Below, piece after piece: positions 1 through 45,340 of a stretch of DNA of 64,000 nt. The notes below the pieces were generated by a model that saw only the letters and a program-made list of their open reading frames with translations, had not been told where the DNA came from and did not search any database. Positions within the stretch are counted from its first letter, which is position 1; every line of letters begins with the position of its first letter. This DNA comes from Lepidodermella squamata (Eukaryota > Animalia > Gastrotricha). The stretch lies in contig JBLDXI010000015.1 of NCBI GenBank assembly GCA_047495785.1, positions 4,216,001-4,280,000 on the forward strand. Direction: 5' to 3'. A program made the position numbers and the translations under genes.

Positions 1-1073
1 CGTGGGCAACGTCAAAAGGGGCTTCTTGAACCACAAGCACCAAACTTGCGCGCCCAAACTTTTTTCGAAAATTTAAATTTGATAATTTTTGTTGCAATCG
101 GAACTTTGAACATAGTTGTAATTCATCTTCATAATTTAATCTTATGATAGTTGAAAACTCTTAATTTTATTCCCGCCATTCCGCGCTTTGCTACCTCTGC
201 TGCGCTTTGGTAGGTAGTTTTTTGAGACACCCAGCAGTAGGTCACGCCTATCGCCTATCGCCTACAGCATCCCGACGCCCAGAATGCTGTAGGCGGTGTG
301 GCTCTGTGGCTCTATGGGCACGTCATTTTCGGATTTGGCATGAGCGGTGCATTAATTCACCGTGAGTTCTCCCTAATTACATCAAAATTTGAGACTTTCT
401 AGGTCTCGATAACTTGCTCTGCCGAAGACAGCGATCGTCTGCTGTTTTAACCGTTTTGAATTCGCATTGCTTTTCTAAGAGCATCCTAAATCCTTGTCAA
501 ACACATGATCAACTCCGCATAATTCGCTTGTATGATTTGCTCCTATAAATTAGATTAAAATATCCTCTTTCTGGGCGCATGTTAGTAGCTAGTCTCTTTG
601 CGTCCCATGCTGTTATAATATAGTCTCCTCTGAAATGATATGCTTACCGATTTATTACTAGCTTGTCAATAATTAATTCAACTGGGTTAACAGCAATAAA
701 ACACATTGTATTGTATTGTATTGTATAAGAGATGATTCGCGAATGAAGCTGCCAAAATGTCGAATTTAGTGCCGAACCTGTCGTTAATATTCAACGCTGT
801 GGCCTGATGCTCTTAGAACTAAGTTGTATTCGTAGCCTCCAGCCTCTAGCCTGGAATTCAACATAATGCACAGGTATAACAACCCCCTCGACCTATAAAC
901 ATATACAGTACTTATTGCAACTTCAGTATTTGTTCCGGAATGTTATAGGAACTTATGTGGTATTCTTGCTCCGTGCGCCATCGTGAGCTGCAATTTTTCT
1001 GTAATCTGTTGTAGATCATTAAAGTAAAAGGCTAACAGTGTTATGGCAGCGCCGTGAATATAGAACATTGTCA

Positions 1074-4000
1074 ATGTTTTCGATTGAAAGGCGCGACGTC
1101 ACGTTTACGGAGATTCTTTTTCAGCTATGTGAGAATCGAAATCATTCATCGCTGGTTGCTTTGTTGGAGCAAACCCAAGGTGAAAATGGGAGCAACGAAG
1201 ACATCGTGAATTTAAGAGATCCATCAGGCCAAACACCACTTTACGCCGCTGTTGCGAGCGGAGCCCTGAACTGTGTCCGTGTTTTGCTGGAGCATGGGGC
1301 CGACCCAAATTACGCATGTTCAGCGGCTTATTTTTGTCGAACGCCTTTGCACTTCTGCGCCGCAGAGGGAAGCGCCGTGGAAATTGTTGAGCTATTGCTT
1401 AACCACGGCGCCGAGCCTCTTCTGCAAGACCTTCACGGAGACACGTGCCTAACGTTGGCTAATCGTTATGGCCATTTAGACATGCATAGCCTGATGTCGA
1501 CGTGCTCTGAGCAGCGAGATCAGATGTTTGAACTCATTGTTAATCGTGAGTTTTCTAGATATTGTAGTCAACGGATACTTGATAACTACTTTTTTATTAG
1601 AATTCGAGTCGCTTCTCTTGAATGGTGACATTGACGCGGCAAAGAATTGTTTATTATCGGTGCGCAACAGGAGGCAAACTTTTCTGAAACATCTATCGCG
1701 TCGTTCGCAAGCAATTGTTATCCAGTAAGTACTCTCAATACTAAAGAAATTTGACGACATCTCCGTTTTTCTTATAGGTGCATCGAGCGTAATCTCGCCG
1801 ATTCTGTTCGATTACTGGCCGACAGTGGCATCGACTGCATGTCAATAATCATTGAGCCTAATGGAGATAATGTGCTGCATTGCGCTGCTAAATTCGGTGC
1901 TGATAAAGTTGCCGTTGTAATACTTGAGCGATGGCCGTCTTTGTTCTGCCGAACCTCTGCTCTTGGTCGATTGCCGCTTCACGATGCTTGTGAACGTGGC
2001 CGTGCTAGCGTAGTTCGGTTGTTTCTTACTTATCAAAACTACCCTCGTTCCATCGTGGTGACTCAACAAAGTCCTTATGGCTGCTATGAATTTCCGATAG
2101 ATCTCAATCATGTCGACGCCGATAGTCGCACGGCATTGCTAGATGCCTGCTCTTCCGGCAGCGTCGATACGGTGAAAGCTCTACTTGATGCGAAATTTAC
2201 ATCAGTCGGCTCTGGTTTCGGCAACTTTCAGATCCCTATCATCCATTCGCCTTCTGTGAACGAAACACCTGTTGGGAGTTTATCAAATTACGTATCGAGT
2301 TTATTCAAACGGATGCGAGTTCCATCAACGAATGGCAGCAGTACTGGCATTCCATTTTCTCACAGTTTCCAACTTGGCGTTGGAGGAGCCTTGGCTACTC
2401 CGAACAGCTCGAGTCGTCCTGTCAGGTCTGGATCGACCATTTCTTTGGAAGACCGGTCGATGCAAGGGGCATTCAGCGATTTTGAAATCGTCTCCCCTCA
2501 GCCTAAGCCAACGAGTCCAGGAGGCGTGTTCAATCCGATCGATTTGAACGTGTTTTCCTACGATCGCGTAACCCCGTTATTGGCAGCTATTCGAATTCAG
2601 AATCGTCAAATCGCTGCATTGTTGTTACAATCAGGCGCTGATCCGGAATTACCTGCTCAATGGCGGGGTTATACTGTGACACCGCTACACGCCGCGGTCG
2701 AACTTCGAGACGGCGAATTGGTTGACTTACTCCTTCAATCGGGCGCTATTGATAACGATTGCGCCGCTTTGGAAAGCGCGCTTAGATCCGCCCCTCATTT
2801 AGTTCCGGTTTTTCTCCGTCGGTGGAGTGAAGTTGATCGGGAAGTTCAGATTAACGTGGACTCAGTCGCTGAATTGGCCGAGCTGAGTCGCTGCAAAACT
2901 GAAAGTGTCGTTCCTGTCGCTATCAACTGGAGGGCGAAACCTCAACTTCGGGATTTGCCTCAAGCCTGGCTTGTAGGCTGTGCAATCTTTCACAATCCAG
3001 CGTTATTACTCGACGATTTTGTCGCCTGCTCCGTTATTACTCGACTCGATATTAGTGCAAATGCTCTTCGATCATTGCCTAGTTATTTATTCCATATGCA
3101 AAGTTTACAAACTTTGAATGCCGCGTCTAATCAAATTGAGGAAATTACGTCCGGAGGAATTCAGCGGACTTTTCTATCGTCCTCGCTTCGGGAAATCGAC
3201 TTATCATTCAACAGATTACAAACTATTCCTGCTTTTATTTTTTGGCTCAAACGCCTTAATAAGTTATACGCCGATAACAATATGATAATGTCCCTACCAT
3301 CAGATCTATGGGAAAATACTTCTTTAGCAGAGTTGAAGTTGGCGAATAACCGCCTGGAAGGAGTTCCAGTTAAACGACTCGGTCGAGCTGCTATTGCGAA
3401 AATGACAATTGAGGTGCAATCGAATCGCTCATCTGAGTCGCCATCAAACAGTCGGGGGCAGCAAAAAACGCATCGAAGCACACCGTCAGATGCCGGAAAA
3501 GAGCATTCAGAACTTCAACAACACGATTTGTGGTCACTTGAGCTGTCATCCGACGTCGGGGTTATAGCCGATGATAATATCGGGGGAATTCCGAACAATG
3601 CCGGTGACGCGAATGCTCAGCCGAATTGCTGTGCCATTCGATTCTTAGATTTGTCGAATAACCATCTAACGATTGTCCCATCTAGTTTGGTTTGCTTAGC
3701 GCCATTGTTGCGGACTTTGAACCTGTCGCAGAATCACATAACATCCATATCGCGTTGGCCGGCTGATTTCCCGCCATCGCTGCATACTTTGGATTTATCA
3801 AATAACAAGATCAGCGCCTTTTCCGGAAATATGAATGACGATTCATTGCAGCGAAAACCGTCGAGTGATGTGATTCTGCCGTGCTCGAACCCGGTTCAGG
3901 TTACAGTCGAACCCGATGAGAGGGCTCGAAGTGTCACTAGACCTGACTCTCGCCGCGTCAGAAGCCGGTCTTGTGATCGCAGAAAGGGATCAGAAGGCGA

Positions 4001-7000
4001 GCGAAGATTCGCCGCCAGTTGTTTACATCGTCAACACACGTCTCTGATCAGACTTCGAACATTAAATTTAGCGAATAATGGCATGACAAGTTTCGTGTTT
4101 GAATCATCCACCGCGCCTGGAATCACCCAGCTTGATTTGAGTTCGAATAAATTTACAGCGTTGCCACAATCGCTGACTCAGCTGCAAAATTTGTCGGTTT
4201 TGAACGTGTCAAACACTCTGATAACAACACTTCCACCTGAACTGTCCCGCCTGAACCGGCTGTGGAGTCTTGAAATATCCAACTGCCCGTTATCAGGCGA
4301 ACTGGGCGCATTAGCTCGAGGCAAAGTAAGAACTGCTGACATCATCTACCACTTGCGGGCATCATTGGACAGGGCCCGTCTTCGGCCTATAACTCGGCTA
4401 TTGGTGTGTGGCTTTCCAGGTTCTGGGAAGTCGAGTTTGATCGACGTGTTGAAACGAGCTGCGAGCACTACAACGCCCCCGCCAGGGCATCAGAATAACT
4501 CGGATTTGTCTCAGGTAAAATTGATTTTCAATTTATCGTTATATAATTCCAATTTCGAGGCGTTCTCAGTATAAAGCTGAAAGTTCGCTAACTTAATCTT
4601 TGCAGCTGTACATTTTTTAGCTGTCAGAAATAATTTTTTTTGAAGATTTCGAGCTCCTGAAATTGATACCGCATTTGTTCCAATAGCAGCCCGGGCTTCT
4701 AAAATTTCAACCTCAAAATTTTGAAAAATTCGAAAATCAATTTTCGGCGAATCGCTCATTTTTTATGTTTTCGAACCGACTTGACCCATCAACCCTGGGC
4801 TACTAGTGGAACACATACGGTATTAAAAATAGAAAACAGCAATGATGTTTTTTGGCTGGGTTTAATCAAGCGAACAAATGTTGATTTTATCGAGTTTGCT
4901 CGTGGTGTAAACATGATCATCTGAATTCATGGCCATCGCTTGTGCGTCAATGCCTGTTATATGAAGCCACAATTGAAAATGGCTGTAATTTTACCGTGTT
5001 GATAGTGTCAAATTGAGTTTGTGAAGTTGTAATTGAAAATTTAATACGCGCTAGCGAATGTTCAAAACTCGATAAAAAAATCTATACCTGATACATCGTT
5101 CAGCTGTGGCTAAGAGAATAATAATGGCTACTCAATATGGTGTAAAATTTATGAGCCAAAGGCCAGTTTTATGCGCAATTCCTATTTTTCAGCTGCTCAA
5201 CTGCATGTTTTTTGTTGCAAACAGACGAACGTGATAAGAATGCGAAGTTACATCACGTCGAGCGCGTGTTTTTATTTCACATTTGTCTCAAACAATTTTT
5301 TCAAGTTTTTTGAATGAAGATGAATGATGATAACGACAATAACAGTATTTATATAACCACGAGAAATTAGGTCTCTACTTTACAGACTGAAAGCATGGCA
5401 CATTTGAAAAGGTAAATATATTATAGCGATAGAAATCCAGTTTGAGATTCGTACTCACGTAAATTTTGGTTTATATTAATGCGAAATAGTGGTACAAAGT
5501 TGTATAGTTCGCCGCCGCTATAATAAGAAGATTATGACTCGAAAAACACATGACGCGGCGCATTATGAAGAGTGGCCAAATCAGCGAAATGTCCCTCGCG
5601 CTGTTGTTGAAATGATACGAAATGAGTGAAGCAAACAATAAAGTAAAAATAGCTAAAAATTTAGCGTTAATTGTCGATATATCACCAAAGCCGCGACGAT
5701 TAAAATCGTCGTACCAATGGCGATGGCAAGTGTTGAGAGCAGCAGACTTGCGGCGTGAGTGATTCTTTGCCGTTTCGATTCTGAGTTATTTTGGCACGCG
5801 AGGACTAAACTGGGGATGGCGAGCGGCAGGCAGCCGAAAACTAGCGATATCAGCGCGTAGCCTATGGCGAATCGCCGTTCGCTTTTCGTGATTTCAGGCC
5901 GGAGGACAGCTCCGTTCTGGAAAACGAAGGGCACGTTGCGTTGTAAATACGCGGCATAATCATCGCGAAAGTTGAGAAATTGCAAGTTCGACGTTGATTG
6001 AACGCTATTCCTCGAGGCCGATTGCTCGCCGCTGCGACTCTTCTTCAAACTAGCCAGCGAGTGGTAGATGACGTTATTCGTTAAGGTAGCACCTTTCTCC
6101 GCAGGTGGCGGCCGATTGTTGTTCAGGTTGAACGTGACTGAATAAATATTTTCGTTTTGCGATATCCGAGGTTGCGGCTGCACTATTTGCGGTAGCGCAT
6201 TTTTTGACGCGTTTTCGATATTCATGACAGGGAAGTGAAACGGGTTGGTGATGAATGCGCTAGGTATGTTCAACACCTCCGTGCTACCTGCTATTACGGC
6301 CGTTTCATCATCGCGCTCGGCCATAGGTAGGTAATAAAAAACACGGCACTCGATTCACCTAGAGGTAAGATAATAAGATGTTGCGATAAGTGCTTAGTGA
6401 AAAATGATTAAAAACAGCCGTTAATGCAGAGGTTTTTTGATTAAAATTTCATGTAAACACGGACGGTTGCTGGTCAAAAATAAATCCTCGAGTTGATAAA
6501 TTGAAGCGGTAGAAGAGCGGGTGACTTAGTGTGTATGTGTTTTATAAAAAGGAAAAGCACCCGAAATTATTAATATAAAAATGAAAACATAATTTGAAAT
6601 GGCGCTGGGCGACTTAATTCTACTACCTGTGCTGCAGCGTGTATTATTTTTCACTTGAGAATAAACGAGCGCGTTGAAAGGAGATTCGGGCAACCGACCG
6701 GACGACGCGCTAACAGCATAAATAAATAGCGCGCGGCCCTATTATAGCGCTACCTTAAAATATCGCGCGCGCGCGAGCGACAGAACGTGTTTGCGTCGTT
6801 CTTCGTCGAAAAATCGATGCACACGCGCGTAGACAAACAACTGGCGATGATGATGATGTTGATGGACAGCGATGCCAGTTTGGCCGGTTAATATAAGCAT
6901 ATTGTTATTACACGAGCCTTAAAGTCGCAAAATATAGAGACGTTGCGTTGGGGACGACGAACAGCGGAACTTCATTTGCTTTTTAATATAACAAGTGTTT

Positions 7001-10000
7001 GTTTCGACCCTCAGGTAAAAATTTGCGCCCGTCGTTGTCGCACTTGAGATCCCGCAAATAGCAATTACGACCGAGTGTTGACTCGGTTGTCGATAGGCCC
7101 TATCCGATATAAATTCATCGCTTTAATATTTTTTGTTTTCCTCTTTGCAGCCGTTAATCGATTGGGGCCAGCTCGCGGTGGAATTTCGCCCTGAGGGTCC
7201 TCTCACCTTCCGCCTCGGTGAACTGTCCGGCAAGCCTGACTTTCGATATATCGGCGCCAATTTCCTTACTCAACGATGTGTTGTTCTGATCACTTTTCGC
7301 TTGACCGACTACCCTACGTCGCAAATAGTCGACGCGCTGGCCAGCTTCGTACGCGATATCAACCTACTCATCCCATCAGCGCCGGTTCTTATCGTCGGAA
7401 CGTTCGCCGACGTGCTCGCCGAGAGCGTTCTCGAGAATGGCTCAGCTGATATGATGCCAATTTGGCGGCGAAAACTGGCAACTGCCTTTCAAAACGGCGA
7501 CCCGACTTCGATGTTGAACTCATCAACTAGTTTCAATTCGAGCGATATGCTATTTGACGTGTCCCTAAATAGCGCTGAGGCTAGTGATTCTGAGGTCATA
7601 TTACCTGGAAATTGTAAATTGATGGTAGTTTCGACGACGAAAAATCGGAAAAAGAACGGCAACCATTTGCTGCGGGAAGTTCATAGGCTAGCTTTCGAGT
7701 GGCGGGGTGGGTTGAATTCGCAACGAAACGCGACGCCTGGCCAGGGCAGCTACCAAACACCACCCACCTTAAAGCAAACAGTGCCGGCGATTTTCGCCGA
7801 TACTGAAAATGCGGTGAATAAATTGGCGCAAAGTTTACTGAACGCCAGATTGCCGCCACTCTTAGCCGGCGCGTTCTTCCAAGAGGCGGTGAAACAACAA
7901 CTGACTGAAATGAATTTGAAAACGTATCGAGATTTAGACGAACTCAATCAATGCGTGCGTTTCTTGCATGAAATCGGCATAGTCGTGCATTTCGACGAGC
8001 CGTCCGTTGCTGATTTGTACTTTCTAAACGTTCAGTGGTTGTCGAGATTACTCGCTGATGTAATAGCTAAAGCTGTGAGTGACCCGGCGTCGCCACGCCG
8101 CGGCCTTTTGGCCTTCGATGATGTGGTTCAGGTGCTAAATAAGCATGAACCAACCGGGGTTTTGACTCAGAATAAGTTCATATCACTACTGGCCCGCTTC
8201 GACGCTGCTTTTTCATGGGACGGTGGTTCCCATTTGATAGTACCAGGCTTTCTTCCAACCGTTGAAGACATCGATGGCCTTGTGCTACCGCTGAAACCTG
8301 TCCCGCAAGCACACCGGCCTTCGATCCGGCAGTCTTTATTAGAACCCGAAGTTGAAAGTAATAAGCAGTCGGATGAGTTAAATAATTCACTAGCGAACGA
8401 TTCAGACGCGTTTGCTTTCGATTTGAATCGGTTTTACCTCATCAATCACATTCCGTTGAATTTCTGGCCTCGTTTAGCCGTCCGTCTTCTGCCTTGTGAA
8501 TTATTAACCGAAATTCTGTCATGTGCCGACGAAAAATCGGGTCACACCCCCGCGCCCGTTGTCAAGCTATGGGACACCCGTATCGAGTTGTTCACGTCAG
8601 AATCCGCCAACAGCCCTATCATGATTGTCGAGCAAATCGATCGGCTGCATTTGAGACCTGGCAACCCGAAATGGAGTTTGTCCCTGAATGGGCAAATGTT
8701 GTGGACAGTTTCGAGTTCAGTTTCGCTGATATCGATCCGGGTACCCTACTTGGCCAAGTCTAACCTCGGGGTTCGGCTGATGAGTCTGATCACCGAATTT
8801 ATCGATCAATTGCTGGAAGATTGGTACCCGGCTATCGGCAGTAGATTCGCTCAGGATACGCTAGGATCTTACCTGGTCTACCGCCTCGTACCCTGCTCGC
8901 ATTGTTTTGCCGGCGACGATCTAGCTCTGGTGCCGTGTTTTCTGCTCGAGGAGTGCATGGCTGCGTCTTGCCCATTGAGCCAACCCGCATCGACCCCGAC
9001 AAATACCGAACCTCCATCAACAGCCGGGTCTTTGTTATGTCCGAAGGGTCACACCCTCGACATATCTTCAGCAGCTCCTGACCTAGTTTTCGCAGACATT
9101 CCGAAATCTCAACTCGTCGACTGCGCTCAATTCTTGGAGAAGGCCTCCTTACTAGGCTGCGGAGCTTTAGGCCCTGTTATCTCGGTATCCCTCGCGAAAT
9201 TGCAGCTACATGCTCGAAAATCAGCCCTGTCTAACGCTCACTCAACAGCCGCCGGTCAGGACATGTCGTTTTTCTTGCCGCGATCCGGTTCGTTCAACTA
9301 CCACCATCCGTCGAAAAGCGTCGCAATCAAGTTCTTCAACCCAGTCGATATCGATTTGACATCAGTTAGCGGCCCGGTCACGACCGCCCAAGGTTTGGGT
9401 GATCAGTACCGCCGCCTTAACGATCAGTTGCGGCGGCGTTTTAAGGCGGATCCTGTTCGATTGGCCTGTGAAGCTTATACCAGCGCGAGGCAGGAGCTAT
9501 CGGTAATGCTTTGCCTTAGGCACGCTCATATCGTCGGTTTGGTCGGCGTTTCACTGAAACCCCTCGGCCTGCTTCTTCAGCTAGCCCCATTAGGGTGTCT
9601 ACTCGATTGGCTGCAGTCGTATCGTAGAGTTGGCCAGCAATTGACGTCGAATACAGTGGTTCAGGTGATAGCTCAGCTGGCTGATGCGGTCGCGTATTTG
9701 CATCGAATGGGCGTGATCTATCGTGATTTGAAGTCTTCCAACATTCTGGTGTGGCGTTTCCCGCGACCAACTGCTGTTTCCAACGCTCCGAATGCTTTCA
9801 GTGACGTGCCCTCGCCCGCTGAATCGATGTCGAGTGTTCAAATTCGTCTATCAGACTTCTCGATAGCGAGATGGTCGGGCGGGTTCGGTTGCCGGGGCCA
9901 GGCGGGAACGCCCGGGTTCATGGCGCCTGAGGTCATTCAATACAACGGGGAGGAGACTTACACGGAAAAAATTGATTGCTTCTCGTTTGGAATGGTGGTT

Positions 10001-13000
10001 TATGAGCTGTTAACGCTACGATTGCCATTCGAAGACCGGCCGAGTGTTAATGCGAGACATGCCGTTCTCGCCGGGTTGCGGCCACCCCCTACCCTAGCTA
10101 TGTTCACGTACGGCCAGATTTTTACTGACCTAATCGCGGCTTGCTGGCGCAAAGACCCGGCTGGTCGGCCGTCGGCTCAAGATATCTTGCGACTAGCAAA
10201 CTGGCCTGGTATGACGCGAGTTGTTTCGATTTCGTCGATAAATGGCATTCCTGAGCTGTTGTACACTGCGCCTATTCCGCAACAGGCCGGGACCCGTGGT
10301 GCTGTTCTTGCGAGGTATAACGTGGCTGAAAATCGAACGCACATCGATTCGATCGGCTTCGACGGTGATGAGTGCTTTCAGCTGCAGCATTTGGCTGAGC
10401 ATCCACCTCGGGAGAATGCTCCGCGCAAGAATTCGAGAAATTCAAGTCAAACTGAGTCGCAGCAACAAGTGATTATGGTCACGTGTCTCACCATGTCTGC
10501 ACAGCTTCTATTCACTGCTGATATTGCTGGGCTGATTCATTGCTACCGGTAAGTGATAAAATTTAAATTCTTGGTGATCAAACTGAGTACCGAACCGAGG
10601 GATGTTTGTATCGAAACGTTGGCCATTGTAGGTAATTATAATCGACAAATTAGCGGCTTAATTTTTGCAATTTCGAGTCATTATTCTCAACATTTCGGGT
10701 AGATGTTATACCGTAGTGGCCATCGTCAAGCGATAAGCTACCAAACAATCAGCAAATAGATGGAGGCATCCTTCAAAGGTTTCCTTCAAAGTTTCACGTG
10801 CATGAACCCCTTAGGTTCTGAAAGGACGAAATTCTCGTAAATCGCACCAAGCGCGACAATGTTTCCGAAATTGATTATCACCAGGTCGGCGTCATCAGCA
10901 AAGGGCTTCGTTAGGATTCCAAGATGCCTGCAAACTTCTACCACCGTTCTATTATTCACAAGTAAAAGAAACTACTTCCGCGGTGTGCACAGTTTCTGAA
11001 AGTTCTTCAGGATCTTGTGTGTTTTTGTGTGAGGTTCTGCAAATTCGGCAACAACAAAACCCTCGATGAAAATGCGCTCTTGTTCATAGCGTGCAAAGGC
11101 ATAATTGCGACATTGCATTTTAACCATAAAATCCATTATGCCATCAAGAAGAGGAATGTCATCTGCTAGAAATGCAATCTCCACACATGAAGCCTTATTA
11201 GCAGGAAAACTGGATACTCGCTTGGCATTAGTTATTTTAGCACCGCAAGGCTGGAAAAGTACATCATTTTCATCAGCGGAAATTTGAAAGCTCGGAAATG
11301 CTGATTTTTCTGTTGTCTGCAGTAGCTTTATTTCATAACTGAACAGGTTGACATTAGTCAGTATTCTCATCACTTCGTTCACATCCCAAAGGAAGTAGTC
11401 GTCGCTGTCAGGATTGTTGGTTGCGTAAACGCGACCGGTGTCGTCTCCAAAGAAGCAAAACCCCTCTCCGCTGGCTTGATTGACAGCGAAGCCGCCGATA
11501 ATGTCAATCTTACGACCAAAAGCCCACGGAAAGTCCTTTACAAGAAATCCTTTTTTGGCGAAGAAAGATGACGCGGCTTTGACCGGATTTCCCGACGTGA
11601 TCTTGTGAACGTGAAGATGTGATCTTCCGCGATTTCGACAGTCTCGTTCTCCAAGAGAAGTGTCGCCCCCTCGAACGTTCTGGCAAACTTGGCCCATTCA
11701 AGGCCCTACATTCGGCAGGCTGTATAAATGACAAAAAATGACAACGAGTTGAAGCCCTTATCCTTCAGTGTATCTTACTCACCAACGCGACAACCCGATG
11801 CTTTATCGACGATTTCGCATGTGGTCATGAGTGTAAGACGGCCGTCCTGGGTGACTGCATTTTTCGTAAGGGAAACGGCCTGTAATTCGCCAATGACATT
11901 CACGCCCTTCTTACTGCCGGTCGCGAACAGCTGACTGATGCCTTCAAGGATAGGCCTATGCTTAGGCAGGAAGTACGTCATTACAGCCGTCATCGGAATG
12001 TCCTTAATCACCAGCTCAGGGTCATCCTTAGCTAGGCGAAGAATTTTGAACGGGTATTGGGTCACGGACGCCTAGGACGCCCTTGTTGGCAGTGGGCCGC
12101 TGTTCCGAGCTGAAAGTCCAGATTGATGGGAAATAAGCAGACTCGACCCTTTCAAGGTTGGTCGAGTATAAGATCGCCGGGAAGCGCGCCCCTGGCAATG
12201 ACGGAGTTGTTACCAAGTTTCAGCTATTTGAATTCCAGAACAAAAAAAGCATACCTAAAATAATTATTAAGGAATAATGCAGAAAAGAGTTGTTTCGGAG
12301 TCTCTGTACCCAGCTGACAAAAATCGCCTTGATTTCGAAATTTCGATCAGAAAATAGGATTCTGAGATATCAGGAAATCAAATAATATATTTCCGTTTTT
12401 TTTTTTACTTTAGGATAGCAAGTGGTGAGTATCTTGGCTGTGTGCCGGCTGGGCGAACCGGTTGTCACGCTATTTCCTTATATTGCTGCAACGAAAGTAG
12501 CCAGCCAAACAATACGAACACCTTGGACACGCCTCGAATCGCAGCTCCTTCAGACGCGGCAACGGCGAGCCACGATACCCTGCTGGCGTTGTATAGCAAC
12601 AGTTTGCTTGTGGTTTTAAGCGCTTCAGCCAATGCTAACCCTGTTCTGGCGCCGATCAGGCGCTTCGAATTGGACCCTGGCAAAGGCACAGTGTGCTGCA
12701 TGGCCGTCATCCGGAGAATGGGCCACGCGATGCCAACAATCAAAGCCCCACCCGCCCCGGGGATGAAACCATCACCATCGAAGCGAGAAAATGGTCTTTC
12801 GTCGAAAATCAGCATTTTCGAAAAAAAGTTTGTTCGAAGCTTTGATAATTAAAATGAATTGAATATACTTTAATAATGTACTAACTTCAATTCAGCAAAG
12901 CTCTGAAAGAATTCGTGGATGATATCAAGTTAATAGCTAGCTAAATCTTTGCTTGTTTTTAAATGGTGACGGGAAGTGCTAGATGATTCCGTCGTGCGTG

Positions 13001-13851
13001 TCTCACCTCGTGCTTGTAAAAAAAAAAGGTGGCGGTTATCACCGTGTTTAAAACAGCGTTTTTCGTAGAAAATCATGCGATTATTTTGCTATAAATTTCA
13101 ATATTTTTCAGAACTTCTTCAACTAAAATCAAGTCTTTCTTCACACGCCCTGCGTCGCCTGAAGAGTCGGAAAATTGCGGCCCGGGTGTCAACGAATTGT
13201 GGCTCGGGTGTTTCGACGGCAGTATGCTGCTGTGTTCGCCGAAATCGCTGACCACTCCGACAAGACTTCGCGCGCCATCGCTAGCCGGCAGTAAGGACAG
13301 CCAACAGGCGCCACCCATCGCGTCCCTAGTCACAGATTGCGCCTCTGAATCAGTATTTGCCACGCTCTATCTGTCTAGCATTGTCTCACGATGGAGCGTC
13401 CGCCAACGAGTATTACTCGCTCATTTCGATTTTGGAGAGCAGGTAAATTTGGGATATTAACAAAATTGATTAAAATTGAAAATTAAAAATTGAAAAATTA
13501 ATTAAAATTAATAATTAAAAAAATTAAGGTGGAATTTTTAAATTTTATTTTCGTACTCAGATAACGAGTATTTTGCCGCAAAGTTCGCGCCTGCTTCTCG
13601 GCACAATAACCGGTTGTGTGATATCGTCCGATCTCAGCACGCTGAGGCCGTTGAATTCTTTCCCGCTGCACGCCGACTCGATTCTTGCCCTGCTGCCCAT
13701 CGGCGCGAATCAGCAGCAGCTGCCGGACGACCCGGCTAATCAGGACCTGGTGGTCTCGCTCGGCCGCGGTCTTGCCGAGCCACTTGCCGGCCTGCTGGTC
13801 GACGCGGCGCCACCGTCGCGCATGTGCGTCGTTTCTCTGAGTTTCTCATAG
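1074..13851 (+). CDS. LRRK1: Leucine-rich repeat Roco kinase, LRRK1/LRK-1 type (ANK-LRR-ROC-COR-kinase-WD40-like tail), 7 exons
   Basis: Exons joined by eye via GT-AG: 1074-1545, 1601-1724, 1778-4514, 7151-10548, 12414-12827, 13112-13442, 13561-13851. Ankyrin repeats (GQTPLYAA, RTPLHFCA), LxxLDLSxN repeats, P-loop GFPGSGKSS, COR motif FWPRL, kinase motifs VAIK, YRDLKSSN and GTPGFMAPE. Confidence 0.9.
5653..6324 (-). CDS. CD225/dispanin-like (PRRT1/IFITM-like) membrane protein nested in LRRK intron 3
   Basis: 223-aa single-exon ORF with a low-complexity N-terminus, then two hydrophobic segments: ALISLVFGCLPLAIPSLVLA and ASLLLSTLAIAIGTTILIVAALVIY. Confidence 0.6.
   Translation of the reverse strand: MAERDDETAVIAGSTEVLNIPSAFITNPFHFPVMNIENASKNALPQIVQPQPRISQNENIYSVTFNLNNNRPPPAEKGATLTNNVIYHSLASLKKSRSGEQSASRNSVQSTSNLQFLNFRDDYAAYLQRNVPFVFQNGAVLRPEITKSERRFAIGYALISLVFGCLPLAIPSLVLACQNNSESKRQRITHAASLLLSTLAIAIGTTILIVAALVIYRQLTLNF
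10787..12216 (-). pseudogene. Disrupted multi-exon orphan gene nested in LRRK intron 4
   Basis: Coding-like ORFs 12216-12028, 12065-11775 and 11697-10972, plus a further in-frame exon near 10948-10787 after a short GTAGTT...AATAG intron. A frameshift near 12070 and an in-frame TGA just before 11697 break continuity. Confidence 0.45.
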
Positions 13852-17204: not shown

Positions 17205-19400
17205 TCAACGTTGACCGACTAAGAATGATCCAACAGCCAAGGCGTAGCACAGCGTTAAAGTGAAATTGTTGGCATTTAGCACCGTGGCCGAACTCTTAAA
17301 TTTCGATGGCGTTGAGTAGCTCTCGCATCTGGGCCAATTTTTCGGAGGTCGCGGGAACTGATTCTTGCTCCCGACACTGATAGCCATCGTCATACCCATG
17401 CTCTAAAAAATTGGAAACAATTTCTCAGCTTAACACGGTGGGTCAAAAAAGTTACCATGTGGTAATCGACGTGGCAGTGGAGGAGCCAAACGCCTGGATT
17501 ATTGGCGATGAATCGAGTCACGACGTAGCCGCCGGGCGGAACCGTCACTGAATCTTTCGGTAAAGTTTTAGACATTTTCCTGACAAGGGTGCCATTTCGG
17601 TCCATAGCGAGAATTTCATCCGTTGTCAAGTTAGTTCGCACTCTTTCAATCGACAGAACGTGGAATTTGTAGCCGTGAAGATGCATCGGATGCAGAGCAT
17701 TGGGTATAATGCCTTCGTTATCGATCATTATCATCTCAACCAAGGCTCCAAGAGGCACATTGACAACGTGAATGCATTCGCAGAATTCGTCCTTGGGACA
17801 TCTTCTTTGATTAGCACTGCAGTAAAGATTCTCAGGCACGTCGTCAGGTTGACTCATCAACGGCGCTGGCGGCATTTTGAATGAAATTCCATTGATTGTA
17901 GGTGTAACAGTATGCTGGCGATTTTTATTAACCCACGGCCACATCCGGTAATCGTTTACTGCCCGAAAATCCTATAAAAAATGGAGTTAAAAAGAGACTC
18001 AATTTTAGAAATAAATGATACCAGTTCGATCAATATCTTCGCATCAGGTTTTCTCGAGAATACAGACTTATCCTCAATATATGGTTCCAACAGGTCCGTT
18101 TCCAATGTCTTGTTCTCAACAACTGCAAATGGGGGCAGAATTCTTTTATTGAAAACTACGCTCAAAGCCGTGACATTCGCCACGCCCAACGTAGCCTCCT
18201 CAACAGTTTGCGGCTTAGGATTGCCGCCGATATACAAGAATTTAGCCGCGCCTTTCGCTTGATTGGCCGAACATTGCGCATCGCCGTTAACATCAAAACG
18301 GTACGCATTTGTTGGCGACACAATGTCACCGGTGAAAACAGGCACAAAATCGTAACGTTCACCAGGGAATATCGCTAGACTTAAGGTAGGTTGCGCCTTA
18401 ATTGGAACGCCATCAGTGGCGAGTAGAATCAGCAAATGGCCCTCCAGTGTAATTACCATCGGGCATTCTAGATAGGCATTGTTTATAACGCGGAAGCGAT
18501 GTCGCTTTGTTGGATCAAGCGAAAAAACTGGCATTGTCGCTGTAGATAGAGGGTCGTCAACACCAGCGCCATATCTGCCATTTACCAGCAGAACCTTCGA
18601 CGGGGATCCATCAACCCCGGCGTAGTGATGGGGCGCGAATCTCGAGGTCGCTGATTCCGTTTCGAACCAGTCTTGAAGTAAAATAGGCTCGTGATTGTCG
18701 ACGTCGTACAATGGCGCGTGGGGGTCGGCGGCATCTCGAACGATGAAAGCGCCCGCCAGACCGTCAGCCCGTTGAACGCCGGTATGCGAGTGCCAAAAAT
18801 GCGTCCCCACATCATCGGCGTCAAATTCAAGGGTAAAGTTCGAATCGGGCATAATTGGGCATTGCGTTATCATCGGCGTTCCATCCATGAACGGCGATCG
18901 GCGTAGCGTGGCGCCGTGAAAGTGAATCGAGGTTGTTTCGCCGGTATGAAGTTTGTTAACCACTGTTAGCCGAACAGTGTCTCCCTTACAAACCTCAATA
19001 GCAGGGCCTTAAAGCTAAAAATGAGAAAAATCGGTAATGATTTTACTAAATTTCGAACCTGGTAATTGGCGATTGGCGGTTACAACAGGGCGTTTCGTGC
19101 CGCTACCTGGTAAACAAACTGGCAATGAGCAGTCAACCGGATCGTTGGGGCAGTCAAAACACGCCCTTCCCATAGTTGTGTACCATTCAATGTTGAAAAC
19201 ATATTCGCACAACTTAGGATCCTCGCCGAGGTGGCAGACACGGCGGCAATGATGAAGACTAAAATCATCGCCTAAAACTGCCGGTCGCACAGCAACAATA
19301 GGCGTTAATTGCAGGGCAACTAAATCCCAAGGAAAAGTTATTCAATTTTTTGTGATATTTAAAAAATACCTAAAGTCAAGAGCAGCGATTTGGTGGCCAT
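17205..19400 (-). CDS. Laccase / multicopper oxidase A (signal peptide, Cys-rich N-domain, hydrophobic C-terminus), 5 exons
   Basis: Copper motifs HFHG, FWHSH, HPMHLHG and [12 protein letters not shown]. Exons 19400-19370, 19319-19059, 19007-18022, 17971-17456, 17402-17205. Confidence 0.92.
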
Positions 19401-30365: not shown

Positions 30366-32565
30366 TTATATATGGAATAAATTAGCAATAAGCGCGAAAA
30401 TAGTCACCAGATGATGCGGTTTAGATGTCAATAATAACGATAATGAAGACGATGTTTGTTTCACCAAGGCCATTGGAATCCCTCGCGGAGGCGCCCATCC
30501 TCCGCATTTCGGAAAGTCAGGCGGAAGGTCGGCTGGTGGCGATTGAGATCCGACTCGCATTACCAGTGTCATTCCCCAGTCCTAAAAATTATCCATAAAT
30601 TGGAAACTGAATTCAGCTATGATGGGTTCTTACCATATGAAAATCGATGTGGCAATGAAGTAACCAAGCACCTGGGTTATCTGCTCTAAAGCGAAGTACG
30701 ACGTAGCCACCCGATGGCACAGTAACAGTGTCTTTTTGCAGGGCATTTTTAAATTTCGGCCGATAAGTCTCTTCGCTGATGGTTGACAGCACTTCTGCCG
30801 CTGTTAGATTTGGATGCAACTGGTCCTATATTTTATGCAATTAAAAAAAGAAATTCCAAGAGTTTTACTCATACCATTCCAACAACTCGGAACGTGTATC
30901 CGTGCAAATGAGTAGGATGATTCGCGGTAGTAAAAATGCGACCGGTATCAACAAGAATGAGTTCGACTAGATCATTCAGCGCTACTTCCAGCTGATGAAT
31001 ACACGGGCAATGATCCTCCTTAGGGCATCGCCGATTTTCTGAATTACAAAACAGTTCCTTAGGAATGCTGCTCGACTGTGTGAGCAGGGGCACCGGAGGC
31101 TCTTTGAACGATAGGTCATTAAGCCGTGGAGTAAAAATTTTGACGCTGCCACCGGTGCGATAACTGTAAAACGGCTGTAGCCTGTCGTTGCTGGTAACAT
31201 TATGAAAGTCCTGGAAATTATTTTAATAATTTTCGCTAAATTCTAGTAAAAAATTCTAACCATTTCGATAGCGAATCGTTTATCAGGTTTACCGGATAAG
31301 GTCGGATCGTCGTGTAGGGCGTCGAGCAGTACGACGTTCATATTACCTTTCTTCAGCTGATCAGCTTGGCTCCAATCTGTCTTCTGATTTAACGCATTCG
31401 TTAGATTGGCTATCGATACATCGCCCTTGCTATTTGTCGCTTCAGCCTCCGTTCGAACCAGTGGATTTTGTTTGTTCAAATACGTGATTTTCGCCATTCC
31501 TACCGCGTTGTTATTCCTGCAATCCGCCTCGCCAATCGCGTGGAGCCAATAAACGCCGTCAGGGCTGGTGTAATCCCCAGTTCTATACGGGACAAAGTCG
31601 TAGCGCTCGGCAGGCATGATGAGCAACTCCCGCGTGACTTGCGGCTTAATCGGCATGCCATCGGTAGCTACCACCACCAAATTGTGGCCGTCGATAGATA
31701 TCTTAATCGGGCATAGCAAATACGCGTTACTTATCGCCCGGAATCGGTACCGAAATTTCGGGTCCAGTTTATATTCGTACGCAAAAGCCGGTGTCGGAAA
31801 AGCTAGCTGCTGAATGGCGTCGCCTAATCTCGGTATAAAAGTGTAGTTGGGCGAGGGTTGCCACATGCCGTTGACTAGAATCTGCTCAGGTTTGTTACTA
31901 GCATCCCCGAAATGATGAGTGCAAAACCGAAATTCAGCTGTTTCGTTTGGAAACCAGTCTTGAACAATCAACGCGGGCAATTCATCGCGGTCATATAAGG
32001 CTAAGTGAGGGTCATCAGGGTCGCGGATGATCAACGGCCCGTGCAGGCCGTCAGCTCTTTGCAGCCCTGCATGCGAGTGCCAGAAATACGTCCCCGCAGC
32101 ATCTGCCTCGAATTCATAGGTAAAGCTGGTTCCGGGTATTATCGGGCATTGCGTAATCATCGGGATGCCATCCATCCACGGTGTTTTAAGCTGGCGAAGT
32201 CCGTGCCAGTGGATGGCTGTACTTTGCCCGAGATGGTTTTCAATTGTCACTCTGATGCGGTCGTGCTTGCATACCTCGATGGATGGCCCGGGGAATAAGC
32301 TGTTAGTCGTGATAACAGGGCGTTGGCTTCCACTGCCTGTGAGGCATTTCGGCCGGAAACAGTCCTCGGGAACTAGTGGGCACCTGCCGCAGGCTCTCGA
32401 CATTGTAGCATACCACTCGGGTTTGAAGTGATACTCGCATAGTTTCGGCACGTTATCACAGCGCCGGCGGCATGGGTGGTCGTCGGAGAAATTTTCGCCG
32501 TAAACGGTAAATAAAAGTGATGTAATTGATATGAAGATTCTCAATATTAATCGAGTATTAAACAT
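30366..32565 (-). CDS. Laccase / multicopper oxidase B, 4 exons
   Basis: HWHG, FWHSH, HPTHLHG and [13 protein letters not shown]-terminal CRRRC...C Cys-rich domain and hydrophobic C-terminus. Confidence 0.92.
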
Positions 32566-42774: not shown

Positions 42775-44739
42775 CCTGCCTGCCTGCCTGCCCTCATAAC
42801 TAGGGAACCTCAGGATCCCTAGAAAGCAAATTAGATCATTGGGCAGAGGAAAGCCCTATTGTCAAAGGTAATTTGCCAATCCTCAGACAGTAGTTTGAAT
42901 GGCTGTGCTAACTATTTTCTCCAGACGTTTGAAGAAAATTAAGGTATTTTTTACAATTCTATTGTCAGCACTAAGCAGCCTTGCAGGGTCGTGGCCAGCA
43001 ACAGATAAACAGTCGTAAGAAATATGGTAGGCTAACTGGCTCAGAGGAGTAACGTTACCACAGAACATACATGTAACATCATCAATTCTGAAAATAAAAT
43101 GTTCGATACGGCGAAAGACGGTGTTCGTGACGACTCGCAGAGCAGTATTTCTAAGGTCAGGTGGATAATTTTCGAATATCTTACTAATGCCAAAGTAACC
43201 GTCCCTGGCTAATAGGTAGCTGGCATTATATTTATTATGAAATTTGACAGATAGTTCAGAAACATAGCAGTCTTTGACTAGGTTGAAAAATTGCTCCATG
43301 ACTGCCGGGTCACGCATAAACCAGAAGTCGGGAGGCAGATTGTAGGATAATAGAAATTTACGAGTTGCGTGGATGGGATTTAAGACACCCATCTTCGGAC
43401 GAGAATGGAAGTAAAAAGAAAAAGCATCATTCACTAAGGGGTTGGCACATTTCGTCAGCTCACATGTAAACTTGACTGCATTGAGTTTCGCCTTTAGGCT
43501 AGGGGGAATAAGTCCCATAACAAAACCAGTTGATAAACTAGACGCATTGTACGGAATGTCGCGCGCTCTTTTATAATACTTATAACAGACGCTGTCCAAT
43601 TTAGCAACACGGCTAGGGGCGAAGAGGCCCCAGAGTTCGGAGCCTGCAAGCATCGCCGCTTCAATTTTGCTACAAAATAGTGTATCCAAGTTATTGCGTT
43701 CTATCATACTCAATTTGATCCTATGAGAGGAAAGAGCGTTGTAACAGCTATTGCCACGTGTAAGCGCATTTTCAATAGCTTCAAACCAGCTCAAGTCGCT
43801 GGATATCGGTACGCCTAGGTAGAAATCAGATTTTACAACTTTGAGAGGTACGCCGTTCATATTAAAGGAGTAACGGTCAGGTGAAACAGGAGCTTGGGAA
43901 AAAATGATAACTTTCGTTTTACCGGGGTTAGGGCTGAGCCCTTCTCTAGTAGAATACGTCGACATAGCATCAATCTGTATTTGCAAATCCACCGCGTTAG
44001 TTGCAGTGGGTGTGGAGTCGTCCGCATATAATACGCAAAGTACCTTGGTAGAAAGTAACTTAGGAATGTCTGATAGATTTTTGGCATTCTCAGCCAGATG
44101 AAGAGGCAAATCGGCGGTATACAGATTGTACATTAGGGGACCTAAGACGTCACCCTGTCTAACACCGCGTTCAATGGCGATGTCTGCAATAGACAGTTTG
44201 CTGCCAACTCGCACTTTGGCTTTAGCGTCGGAATAGAGAGAGTTCAATCTCTTGGCAAAGGAAGATGAGATACCTAATCGCTGGCATTTCCATATAAGAC
44301 GGTTGTGAGGAACGCAGTCGAAAGCTTTAGTAAAGTCGATTAAACATATAAAGAGCATTCTACCGCGAACGTGGATTTGGTACGTCGCCAACGACTGAAG
44401 GACGAAAGCCGCGTGTAAGCGCGATAATCCTTTTTCGAAACCAAACTGCTCTTCAGGTATGATCGAGTGAATTCTACACCACTTTTCCAGTCTCAATTTC
44501 AGTATAGTAGAATAAGTTTTGTATATTACGGATAAAAGAGATAATGGCCGGTAGTTGTCCGGCTTAGAGGAGTCACCTTTTTTGAACAAGGTGCAAAACA
44601 GAGACAAATTTAGTCCCGATGGCAGGGTGTAGCTAAGGAAACACGGTTCAAAAATTTTAAAGAGCGTCTTGCTGAAAAAAGAAACATTCAGGTCACTGTG
44701 TTGCATGAATTCAGCTGTAATACCATCCGGGCCGGGCGC
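42775..44739 (-). mobile_element. 5'-truncated non-LTR retrotransposon with an intact RT ORF and a 10-bp TSD
   Basis: APGPDG, YRPLSLLS, QFGF, DFTKAFD, GVRQGDVLGP, YADD and a C-terminal CxxC..H..C. CAGGTGGAAG is duplicated at 42765-42774 and 44740-44749. (GGCA)n tail and a 3' hairpin at 42800-42822. Confidence 0.93.
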
Positions 44740-45340
44740 CAGGTGGAAGGTGGCTATGCGCTCAAATCCCACTATGCGCGCGGTTTGCCGAACATTTGAG
44801 GACCAAAAATATGTTTGTTCTTTTCCTAATTATATTGCTGAAAATTATTTGCAGAATCATTATCAAGACTTTCACAGTATATCTGTTGGGTGACCTTGAG
44901 ACGACCTTGACAGCTCAATTTTCATTTTCTGCGCGATTTTCGTTCCATCAGTCAGCGCGATGTTAGCCGGGATTCCACCTGAGCCTGACTGACAGTAAGG
45001 CACAATGCGCGATGCACTTTCACCACTTCTGTACCGTATCGTTACCTTCTCCATGGAACTTAAAATGTAGAGCTTCGTGAATTCATCGTAGATATCAGGT
45101 TATTCTCGGTTATTCTCTGGCGTAGCAGTCACCGCCAATCTTGAACATTTGAATACGCAGTCGGCAGGTTCATGCTTGTGTTTTATTTCATCTTAGTTTT
45201 ACGACGGGGTCAGCGCCCGAGAGACGCTGATCGATTGTAAACATTCACTTGAGCCAAATACTTTCTCCTTCAACTTGTGAGATCATAATATCCTAAATGA
45301 TTCTTACGCAGATTGCAGGCTTACGCATTATTGATATCAA

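What the first reader, a model, noticed from the sequence alone, without database searches (positions are those of the whole stretch)
9854..9871. LRRK kinase naturally carries the G2019S-equivalent: DFSIAR instead of DYGI
GAC TTC TCG ATA GCG AGA encodes D-F-S-I-A-R at the DFG/DYG motif. In human LRRK2, DYG to DYS (G2019S) is the commonest activating Parkinson mutation. TCG is at least two substitutions away from any Gly codon, so a single base-call error is unlikely. The other catalytic motifs (VAIK, YRDLKSSN, APE) are intact. Together with the ROC-COR changes, this suggests a wild-type hyperactive-like LRRK and a source of compensatory substitutions.
Basis: partly seen in the sequence, partly recalled or inferred. 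Interest (0 to 1): 0.8.

Follow-up and report, generated by a model that had tools for sequence, protein, structure and literature searches.

The report
LRRK kinase with natural G2019S-like serine
This small invertebrate's LRRK kinase does carry, as its normal and selectively maintained state, the serine that causes Parkinson's disease when it arises in human LRRK2, but all sampled bdelloid rotifers and related environmental animals carry it too, and whether it makes the enzyme overactive is untested.

Summary
Observation confirmed. Window 9854-9871 reads GAC TTC TCG ATA GCG AGA (DFSIAR) in frame in the kinase domain of an intact, multi-exon LRRK gene. The Ser aligns with human LRRK1 G1411, the LRRK2 G2019 equivalent.

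It is not an error:
- A roughly 1% divergent contig from a public run keeps the codon.
- Three metagenome relatives (67% identical, synonymous sites saturated) read DFSISR with codon TCA.
- Variants in the exon are 34 synonymous to 1 non-synonymous.

It is not unique. Seven bdelloid rotifer species in public annotations have DFSISR or DYSISR, and so does a sister clade of metagenome sequences. More than 100 LRRKs from arthropods, nematodes, molluscs, annelids, deuterostomes and vertebrates keep Gly.

The gene falls in the invertebrate LRRK3 type on a very long branch. Trees cannot tell whether its Ser shares an origin with the rotifer Ser (AU p 0.32 and 0.58). The codon class differs: TCR here, AGT there.

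The "hyperactive" reading is only inferred. All catalytic residues and the alpha-C Gln partner of the Ser are present, and Phe replaces the Tyr "brake". But the same change in human LRRK1 does not raise activity. Whether the genome has a second LRRK could not be checked.

Interest is moderate: a clade-wide natural experiment that none of the papers I could search describes.

The parts
9854..9871 (+). DFSIAR: the Mg-binding DFG/DYG motif with Ser (TCG, 9860-9862) in place of Gly and Phe in place of the LRRK-typical Tyr
   Evidence: sequence and frame; alignment to LRRK1 DYGISR; X1 contig 9554-9897 unchanged at this site
9155..10222 (+). Protein kinase domain, with lineage-specific inserts after the G-loop and before the DFS motif
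   Evidence: Pfam Pkinase 6.6e-33. AF2 model has mean pLDDT 88.4 and pTM 0.87; only the two inserts have low confidence. Generic kinase fold matches, including Roco4 G1179S.
9320..9331 (+). VAIK (beta-3 lysine)
9488..9496 (+). RQE of helix alpha-C: the catalytic Glu, and the preceding Gln that hydrogen-bonds the mutant Ser in Roco4 and LRRK2
   Evidence: role taken from PMC4017136
9719..9742 (+). YRDLKSSN catalytic loop (the LRRK-type Y-R-D form of HRD)
9923..9931 (+). APE, the end of the activation segment
7151..10548 (+). Large exon encoding the rest of ROC, COR-A, the kinase and the start of the C-terminal propeller. The acceptor AG ends at 7150 and the donor GT is at 10549-10550.
   Evidence: Variants are 34 synonymous to 1 non-synonymous. 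Contigs of run X2 cover the exon but not the intron stretch 6440-7039.
1185..4514 (+). Upstream exons: ankyrin repeats, LRRs and the ROC P-loop GFPGSGKSS (4410-4436). The large ORF runs 1839-4514, with donor GT at 4515. Further Ank exons lie from about 1185; that boundary is approximate.
   Evidence: Pfam Ank and LRR; sequence; tblastx to L001
7217..7234 (+). ROC switch II equivalent, GELSGK, where other LRRKs have WDFGGQ (degenerate DxxGQ)
   Evidence: profile-aligned columns; sequence
12409..13848 (+). Downstream exons of the C-terminal beta-propeller (about 12409-12720, 13083-13451 and 13561-13848; boundaries approximate)
   Evidence: tblastn of LRRK C-termini to 13552-13833; tblastx to L001; weak Beta-prop_LRRK2 hit

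Best explanation
Shown: this is a functional LRRK gene (Ank-LRR-ROC-COR-kinase-propeller) of the invertebrate LRRK3 type, under purifying selection. Its wild-type activation-segment anchor reads D-F-S instead of D-Y-G. The Ser is fixed in this lineage. It also occurs in all sampled bdelloid rotifers and in a sister metagenome clade, so it is a clade-level character state, not an oddity of one genome.

Inferred: the kinase is catalytically competent, because every catalytic residue is present. The Ser hydroxyl most likely does what it does in Roco4 G1179S and LRRK2 G2019S. There it hydrogen-bonds the Gln next to the alpha-C Glu (RQE is conserved here) and stiffens the Mg-positioning loop, favouring the DFG-in 'on' state. 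The Phe in place of Tyr removes the hydroxyl 'brake' described for LRRK2 Y2018. The domain would then be intrinsically biased towards the active conformation, with net cellular output probably re-tuned by co-evolved changes elsewhere. In this lineage the ROC switch II is degenerate, so kinase control may depend less on the GTPase.
For: - Sequence, frame and motifs.
- Alignment of the Ser to LRRK1 G1411.
- Codon kept in a roughly 1% divergent run contig.
- DFSISR in three relatives at 67% identity with pS 0.86-0.88 (saturated) and dN 0.27-0.36.
- Variants 34 synonymous to 1 non-synonymous.
- DFS or DYS in seven bdelloid species and in metagenome clades.
- Placement inside the LRRK3-type clade (SH-aLRT 95).
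- Confident kinase fold, including the DFS segment.
- Published mechanism and kinetics: the Roco4 G1179S hydrogen bond to Arg1077 (LRRK2 Gln), abolished by the double mutant (PMC4017136); LRRK2 kcat/KM of 1.1 for wild type, 2.4 for G2019S and 4.9 for Y2018F (PMC6660771).
- ROC switch II GELSGK against WDFGGQ.
Against: No activity measurement exists for any Ser-type LRRK. In human LRRK1, the closest solved relative by sequence, G1411S gives wild-type activity (PMC7886321), so the effect of the Ser depends on context. The protein sits on a very long branch (stem 1.94 substitutions per site) and has large inserts, so the local geometry may differ. The AF2 model gives no information on the activity state. 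Expression rests on contigs of one run whose RNA status is only a guess, and coverage of the exact codon in that run was not shown.
Confidence: 0.5

Rival explanations
1. Tolerated, functionally near-neutral substitution. In the LRRK1/LRRK3 structural context a Ser at the DFG glycine does not change activity. It drifted to fixation once or twice in fast-evolving lineages and is now simply kept.
For: LRRK1 G1411S behaves like wild type (PMC7886321). The window lineage and the bdelloids are long branches with many other changes in the domain, such as inserts and YLD for YRD in Adineta and Rotaria.
Against: The glycine is otherwise invariant in more than 100 LRRK clusters and nearly so in kinases generally. 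Once acquired, the Ser was never lost in any of about 20 sampled sequences, across divergences at which synonymous sites are saturated. That fits selection for the Ser better than drift. In Drosophila, a review reports that the LRRK3-type G1914S mutant promotes lysosome clustering whereas wild-type dLRRK inhibits it (PMC11900240).
Confidence: 0.33
2. Attenuated or scaffold-like kinase. The loss of the flexible glycine, together with the N-lobe and activation-segment inserts and a degenerate ROC, marks a protein drifting towards pseudokinase function.
For: ROC switch II is degenerate and Pfam detects no Roc domain in this gene. There are large disordered inserts. The branch is very long.
Against: The G-loop, beta-3 Lys, alpha-C Glu, catalytic Asp and Asn, Mg-binding Asp and APE are all intact here and in the relative. 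Purifying selection is strong. G-to-S at this site is activating or neutral, never inactivating, in the three systems tested.
Confidence: 0.12
3. Sequencing or assembly artefact, or a rare private allele.
For: None found.
Against: An independent contig with nearby differences keeps TCG. Three relatives from two metagenome samples have TCA. The codon is two steps from any Gly codon.
Confidence: 0.01

Closest known systems
Invertebrate LRRK3-type kinases (Drosophila Lrrk, C. elegans LRK-1 and their orthologues)
   Same: Ank-LRR-ROC-COR-kinase-propeller layout. YRDLK catalytic loop, LVW after it, RQE in alpha-C and the 'xxD[YF]xISR' activation-segment start. The gene falls inside this clade in a COR+kinase tree (SH-aLRT 95).
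   Different: DFS instead of the DYG said to unite LRRK1-3 (PMC13565929). ROC switch II is GELSGK instead of WDFGGQ. There is an insert of about 35 aa between the G-loop and VAIK and one of about 15-20 aa before DFS. The stem branch is very long.
Bdelloid rotifer LRRKs (e.g. Didymodactylos carnosus CAF0744397.1, Adineta vaga I4U23_024954, and Rotaria and Adineta 'unnamed protein products')
   Same: A natural Ser at the DFG glycine: DYSISR in Didymodactylos and DFSISR in Adineta and Rotaria. They also share Ala at the 'GxAGT' position and Leu/Val at exon-2 residue 949, which is Phe in 88% of Gly-type LRRK3s.
   Different: Only about 40-44% identical in the kinase. ROC switch II is intact (WDFGGQ). 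The Ser codon is AGT (one step from GGT), against TCG or TCA here. Adineta and Rotaria have also lost the HRD arginine (YLD). Common ancestry of the Ser is neither supported nor rejected (AU p 0.58 on the kinase and 0.32 on COR+kinase).
Human LRRK2 G2019S (and the engineered Y2018F) and Dictyostelium Roco4 G1179S
   Same: The same residue position and the same amino-acid change. The alpha-C Gln that accepts the Ser hydrogen bond is present. The Phe state equals Y2018F.
   Different: Those are mutants of a different paralogue (LRRK2) or of a distant ROCO kinase, with measured activity gains of about 2- to 4-fold. Here the Ser is the wild type of an LRRK3-type protein and no activity data exist.
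Human LRRK1 (best match among solved structures, E 3e-28)
   Same: Highest sequence similarity among solved proteins; a DYGISR-type activation-segment start.
   Different: LRRK1 has FCD instead of YRD and keeps Gly. Engineered G1411S does not raise LRRK1 activity. The tree places the window protein with LRRK3, not with LRRK1.

Membership tests
LRRK / ROCO kinases | N-terminal ankyrin and leucine-rich repeats | tested here: met
   Pfam Ank (1.5e-18) and LRR_8 (3.1e-27) on the 1839-4571 product
LRRK / ROCO kinases | ROC (Ras-like GTPase) domain with P-loop, switch II DxxG and G4 motif | tested here: inconclusive
   The P-loop GFPGSGKSS is present, and a GTFAD motif stands where others have GTHxD. 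Switch II is GELSGK rather than DFGGQ. No Pfam Roc hit was found on either exon product, but the domain is split by an intron.
LRRK / ROCO kinases | COR domain directly after ROC | tested here: met
   Pfam COR-A 1.2e-11, above the gathering score
LRRK / ROCO kinases | Ser/Thr kinase domain of the TKL/LRRK type after COR | tested here: met
   Pkinase 6.6e-33. The best PDB sequence matches are LRRK1 and LRRK2. All top database hits are LRRKs.
LRRK / ROCO kinases | C-terminal beta-propeller | tested here: inconclusive
   tblastn of LRRK C-termini hits 13552-13833. Exons are conserved with L001. The Beta-prop_LRRK2 hit is only sub-threshold.
LRRK3 subfamily (protostome-type LRRK) | Groups with protostome and invertebrate LRRKs, apart from LRRK1, LRRK2-like and DFG-type (LRRK4-like) sequences | tested here: met
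   610-column COR+kinase tree with the DFG triad removed: inside a 47-row clade with SH-aLRT 95, but on a long branch and unresolved within the clade
LRRK3 subfamily (protostome-type LRRK) | DYG motif, stated to unite LRRK1-3 (PMC13565929) | tested here: not met
   DFS here; both the Tyr and the Gly are replaced
G2019S-like activated kinase (functional class) | Ser at the DFG glycine plus the alpha-C Gln/Arg hydrogen-bond partner | tested here: met
   Ser at 9860-9862; RQE at 9488-9496; mechanism from PMC4017136
G2019S-like activated kinase (functional class) | Kinase activity higher than that of the Gly version | not testable with these tools
   Needs an enzyme assay. The LRRK1 precedent is negative; the LRRK2 and Roco4 precedents are positive.

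The most novel reading that the evidence does not exclude
Rotifer-type LRRKs, this lineage included, have run for a very long evolutionary time with the equivalents of two LRRK2-activating changes (G2019S, and in most of them Y2018F) as their wild type. That would make the kinase constitutively 'on'. In the window's lineage it would also be uncoupled from the ROC GTPase, whose switch II is lost. The substitutions that co-occur with the Ser would then be natural suppressors that show how a cell lives with a G2019S-type LRRK. Candidates are the C-spine position 949 (Phe to Leu/Val) and the activation-loop Gly to Ala.
Probability: 0.15. Interest if true: 0.7.

Novelty: new variant of a known kind. 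Interest (0 to 1): 0.45.

Why it matters
[quoted passage not shown] A whole animal clade that carries Ser there as wild type, often with Phe for the 'brake' Tyr, is a ready-made natural experiment. Swapping Ser and Gly between these proteins and conventional LRRK3s would show how much of the G2019S effect belongs to the motif itself and how much depends on context. The residues that co-vary with the Ser are candidate compensatory sites.

The value is limited in three ways. The protein is an LRRK3-type paralogue, not an LRRK2 orthologue. The same change is silent in LRRK1. Nothing is known about the biochemistry of rotifer LRRKs. I found no paper describing this natural variant, although the bdelloid sequences that show it are public.

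Tried and rejected
- Sequencing error or private allele: rejected.
- 'Unique to this genome': rejected after the exhaustive HMMER search and the follow-up word search found DYS and DFS in bdelloids and in metagenome clades.
- Identifying the organism from a multicopper-oxidase exon failed. The best named hits (36-44% identity) were spread over tunicates, echinoderms, molluscs, insects and Brachionus. Other agents' notes call the genome 'probably a rotifer'. My LRRK data are compatible with that but do not prove it.
- One origin or two for the Ser remains unresolved. The free trees do not join the window clade to the rotifer Ser clade, but AU tests do not reject joining them (p 0.58 and 0.32). 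The codon class differs (TCR against AGT), but the neighbouring conserved Ser has also switched class in this lineage, so that argument is weak.
- A second, conventional LRRK in this genome could not be tested. The genome's proteins are not in the searchable databases, and the scan's notes list other ROCO proteins but no second LRRK. The ENA and JGI LRRK hits I checked (P0003, P0004, P0031, P0385) come from samples other than those of the relatives P0001 and P0277.
- The Foldseek search of the AF2 model gave only generic kinase matches and says nothing about activity state.

Full report
**1. The observation**

Window 9854-9871 reads GAC TTC TCG ATA GCG AGA, which is D-F-S-I-A-R. It lies in frame in a 3.4-kb exon (7151-10548, + strand). 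That exon has a polypyrimidine/AG acceptor and a GTAAGT donor. Pfam finds COR-A and a protein kinase domain in the exon. The upstream exon (ORF 1839-4514, donor CAG|GTAAA) carries ankyrin repeats, LRRs and a ROC P-loop, GFPGSGKSS.

HMMER against all PDB chains puts human LRRK1 first (3e-28), ahead of LRRK2 (2e-19). It aligns 'IRLSDFSIARWS' to LRRK1 'IKLSDYGISRQS'. The Ser therefore occupies the DYG glycine: LRRK1 G1411, equivalent to LRRK2 G2019.

The G-loop (GCGALG), VAIK, alpha-C RQE, YRDLKSSN and APE are all present. An AlphaFold2 model built on a 56-sequence alignment is confident (mean pLDDT 88.4, pTM 0.87), including around the DFS motif. Confidence drops below 50 only within the two lineage-specific inserts (query residues 53-66 and 236-238).

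**2. Real, fixed and constrained**

- A contig of public run X1 covers 9554-9897 and differs from the window only at 9631 and 9766. The DFS codons are therefore unchanged in a roughly 1% divergent haplotype or strain.
- Run X2 may be RNA, but that is only a guess. Its contigs cover both large exons and a nested gene, but not the intron stretch 6440-7039. This hints at transcription. Its coverage of the exact codon was not shown.
- Of 35 listed differences between the run contigs and the window in exon 2, 34 are synonymous.
- The nearest database relatives are P0001, P0276 and P0277, from two metagenome samples. Their contigs L001 and L006 show the same layout: the Ank-LRR exon, a nested minus-strand gene, the COR-kinase exon and downstream histone genes; L001 also shows a RasGAP gene upstream. 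They are 67% identical, and synonymous sites are saturated (pS 0.86-0.88, dN 0.27-0.36). All three read DFSISR, with Ser codon TCA.

**3. Not unique**

An exhaustive HMMER search with the kinase domain against 1.84 billion cluster representatives, followed by a motif read-out on the profile alignment, gave DYG in 96 domains and DFG in 174. It also gave DYS in six LRRK-like clusters and DFS in two domains, only one of which (P0001) is an LRRK.

One DYS cluster is from the bdelloid rotifer Didymodactylos carnosus (CAF0744397.1). A word search seeded with that protein returned LRRKs of Rotaria sordida, R. socialis, Rotaria sp. Silwood2, Adineta vaga, A. ricciae and A. steineri. Every one reads KLSDFSISR, and each also has YLD in place of YRD.

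Further DYS sequences from ENA and JGI metagenomes (P0135, P0156, P0174, P0203, P0223, P0292, P0385) group with the bdelloids; the four used in the COR+kinase tree (P0135, P0156, P0292, P0385) form their sister clade.

By contrast, all of about 100 other LRRKs in these searches keep DYG (102 of the 108 motif matches). Those named come from insects, mites, ticks, spiders, a millipede, crustaceans, nematodes, molluscs, a leech, a nemertean, a hemichordate, a crinoid, amphioxus and vertebrates.

**4. Where the gene belongs**

I built a tree on 610 COR+kinase columns with the D-F/Y-G/S triad removed. It places the window clade inside the invertebrate LRRK3-type clade (SH-aLRT 95). That clade excludes vertebrate LRRK1, a sponge LRRK2-like sequence and DFG-type sequences. 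The window clade sits on a stem of 1.94 substitutions per site, and its position within the LRRK3 clade is unresolved.

The bdelloids and their DYS sister group form one clade (SH-aLRT 99). In that lineage Gly-to-Ser therefore came first. Tyr-to-Phe, together with loss of the HRD Arg, came later, in Adineta and Rotaria.

Forcing all Ser-bearing sequences into one clade is not rejected (AU p 0.58 on the kinase alone, where the constrained tree was in fact better; p 0.32 on COR+kinase). The data do not positively support it either.

Codons were the other line of evidence:
- Bdelloids (L007, L008) and the metagenome sister clade (L005) use AGT, one step from GGT.
- The window lineage uses TCG or TCA.
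- This would favour two origins. However, the neighbouring conserved Ser of 'ISR' is AGT in five loci from other lineages, TCA in L001 and GCG (Ala) in the window. Codon-class change has therefore occurred in this lineage anyway.

Other agents of this scan judged the genome 'probably a rotifer'. My one attempt to test this with a multicopper-oxidase exon was uninformative. If the animal is a rotifer, a single ancient origin is the simpler reading.

**5. What it probably does**

From the literature:
- In Roco4 G1179S the new Ser hydrogen-bonds the residue before the alpha-C Glu (Arg1077, equivalent to an LRRK2 Gln). The LRRK2 G2019S/Gln-to-Ala double mutant returns to wild-type activity (PMC4017136).
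- In LRRK2, kcat/KM rises from 1.1 (wild type) to 2.4 (G2019S) and 4.9 (Y2018F). The Tyr hydroxyl is described as a brake that stabilises the inactive state (PMC6660771).

The window protein has the Gln (RQE), the Ser and the Phe. The simplest mechanistic inference is a kinase domain biased towards the DFG-in state.

Against a confident 'hyperactive' label:
- LRRK1 G1411S is no more active than wild type (PMC7886321).
- This protein is of the LRRK3 type and highly derived.
- Cellular output will have been re-tuned over evolutionary time.

I therefore give about 0.5 to 'active and conformationally biased on', about 0.33 to 'tolerated and near neutral' and about 0.12 to 'attenuated or scaffold-like'.

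**6. Relation to the ROC-COR changes**

ROC switch II is WDFGGQ in every other LRRK3 aligned, the Ser-bearing bdelloids included. It is GELSGK here and SEISGL in the relative. The G4 motif GTHxD is GTFAD here. The ROC degeneration is therefore specific to the window's lineage and does not travel with the Ser.

Within LRRK3, two positions co-vary with the Ser:
- The activation-loop 'GFGGT' glycine is Ala in all Ser types, but also in the leech and nemertean (both Spiralia) and in a mite and a barnacle.
- The residue at position 949 of the exon-2 protein, which I take from memory to match PKA C-spine residue L227, is Phe in 88% of Gly types and Leu or Val in all Ser types.

With only one or two independent origins, these positions are leads and not evidence of compensation.

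**7. Not done or not possible**

- I had no access to the rest of this genome, so the question of a second, conventional LRRK stays open.
- Only assembled contigs of three runs could be laid on the window, not raw reads.

**8. Verdict**

It overstates both the uniqueness of the trait and its functional meaning. The real finding is broader and somewhat more interesting than a single-genome oddity. A whole clade of LRRK3-type kinases (bdelloid rotifers, allied metagenome lineages and this animal's lineage) has replaced the near-invariant DFG glycine with Ser. None of the papers I could search describes this.

Noticed in passing
window 7217-7234 and 7394-7414: ROC switch II is GELSGK where all other aligned LRRK3s, Ser-bearing bdelloids included, have WDFGGQ. 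The G4 motif is GTFAD instead of GTHxD. The relative P0001 has SEISGL and GTFSD. The GTPase may be impaired or re-wired in this lineage only.
   Followed up: partly
window 5653-6324 (-), inside LRRK intron 1: A nested 223-aa minus-strand ORF, conserved in the relative's intron (L001 7819-8088, 69% over 90 aa by tblastx) and covered by contigs of run X2. It has only a weak, sub-threshold CD225/dispanin hit (E 0.0099).
   Followed up: partly
window 10972-11697 (-), inside the intron after the kinase exon: A 241-aa ORF with no Pfam match. The corresponding intron in L001 is short (about 13357-13522) and lacks it, so this intron has grown here by about 1.9 kb.
   Followed up: no
window about 4640-4839: Contig depth in run X1 jumps to about 9700, against about 80 elsewhere, and there are many loose ends. 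This is a high-copy repeat in the LRRK intron.
   Followed up: no
P0281-P0288 (Adineta and Rotaria LRRKs): These bdelloid LRRKs have YLD in place of YRD/HRD (no RD arginine) and LACK in place of VAIK, in addition to DFS. Didymodactylos keeps YRD and DYS.
   Followed up: partly
L005 (JGI metagenome 3300078829), 139-6390: A DYS-type LRRK (P0385, 2083 aa) encoded as a single 6.25-kb ORF without introns, on a contig with 41.7% GC. It belongs to the sister clade of the bdelloid LRRKs; the organism is unknown.
   Followed up: no
window 42883-44772 (-), 47100-52650 (+), 17390-18963 (-), 31243-32565 (-): A reverse-transcriptase ORF (RVT_1); a DENN-SBF2-myotubularin (MTMR5/13-like) gene; and two multicopper-oxidase genes whose best named relatives are scattered across animal phyla at 36-44% identity.
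   Followed up: partly
run X2 laid on window 5576-10295: Many short contigs of run X2 carry 'opposite strands' joints about 90-120 bases apart (fold-back chimeras). This looks like a library or assembly artefact rather than biology.
   Followed up: no
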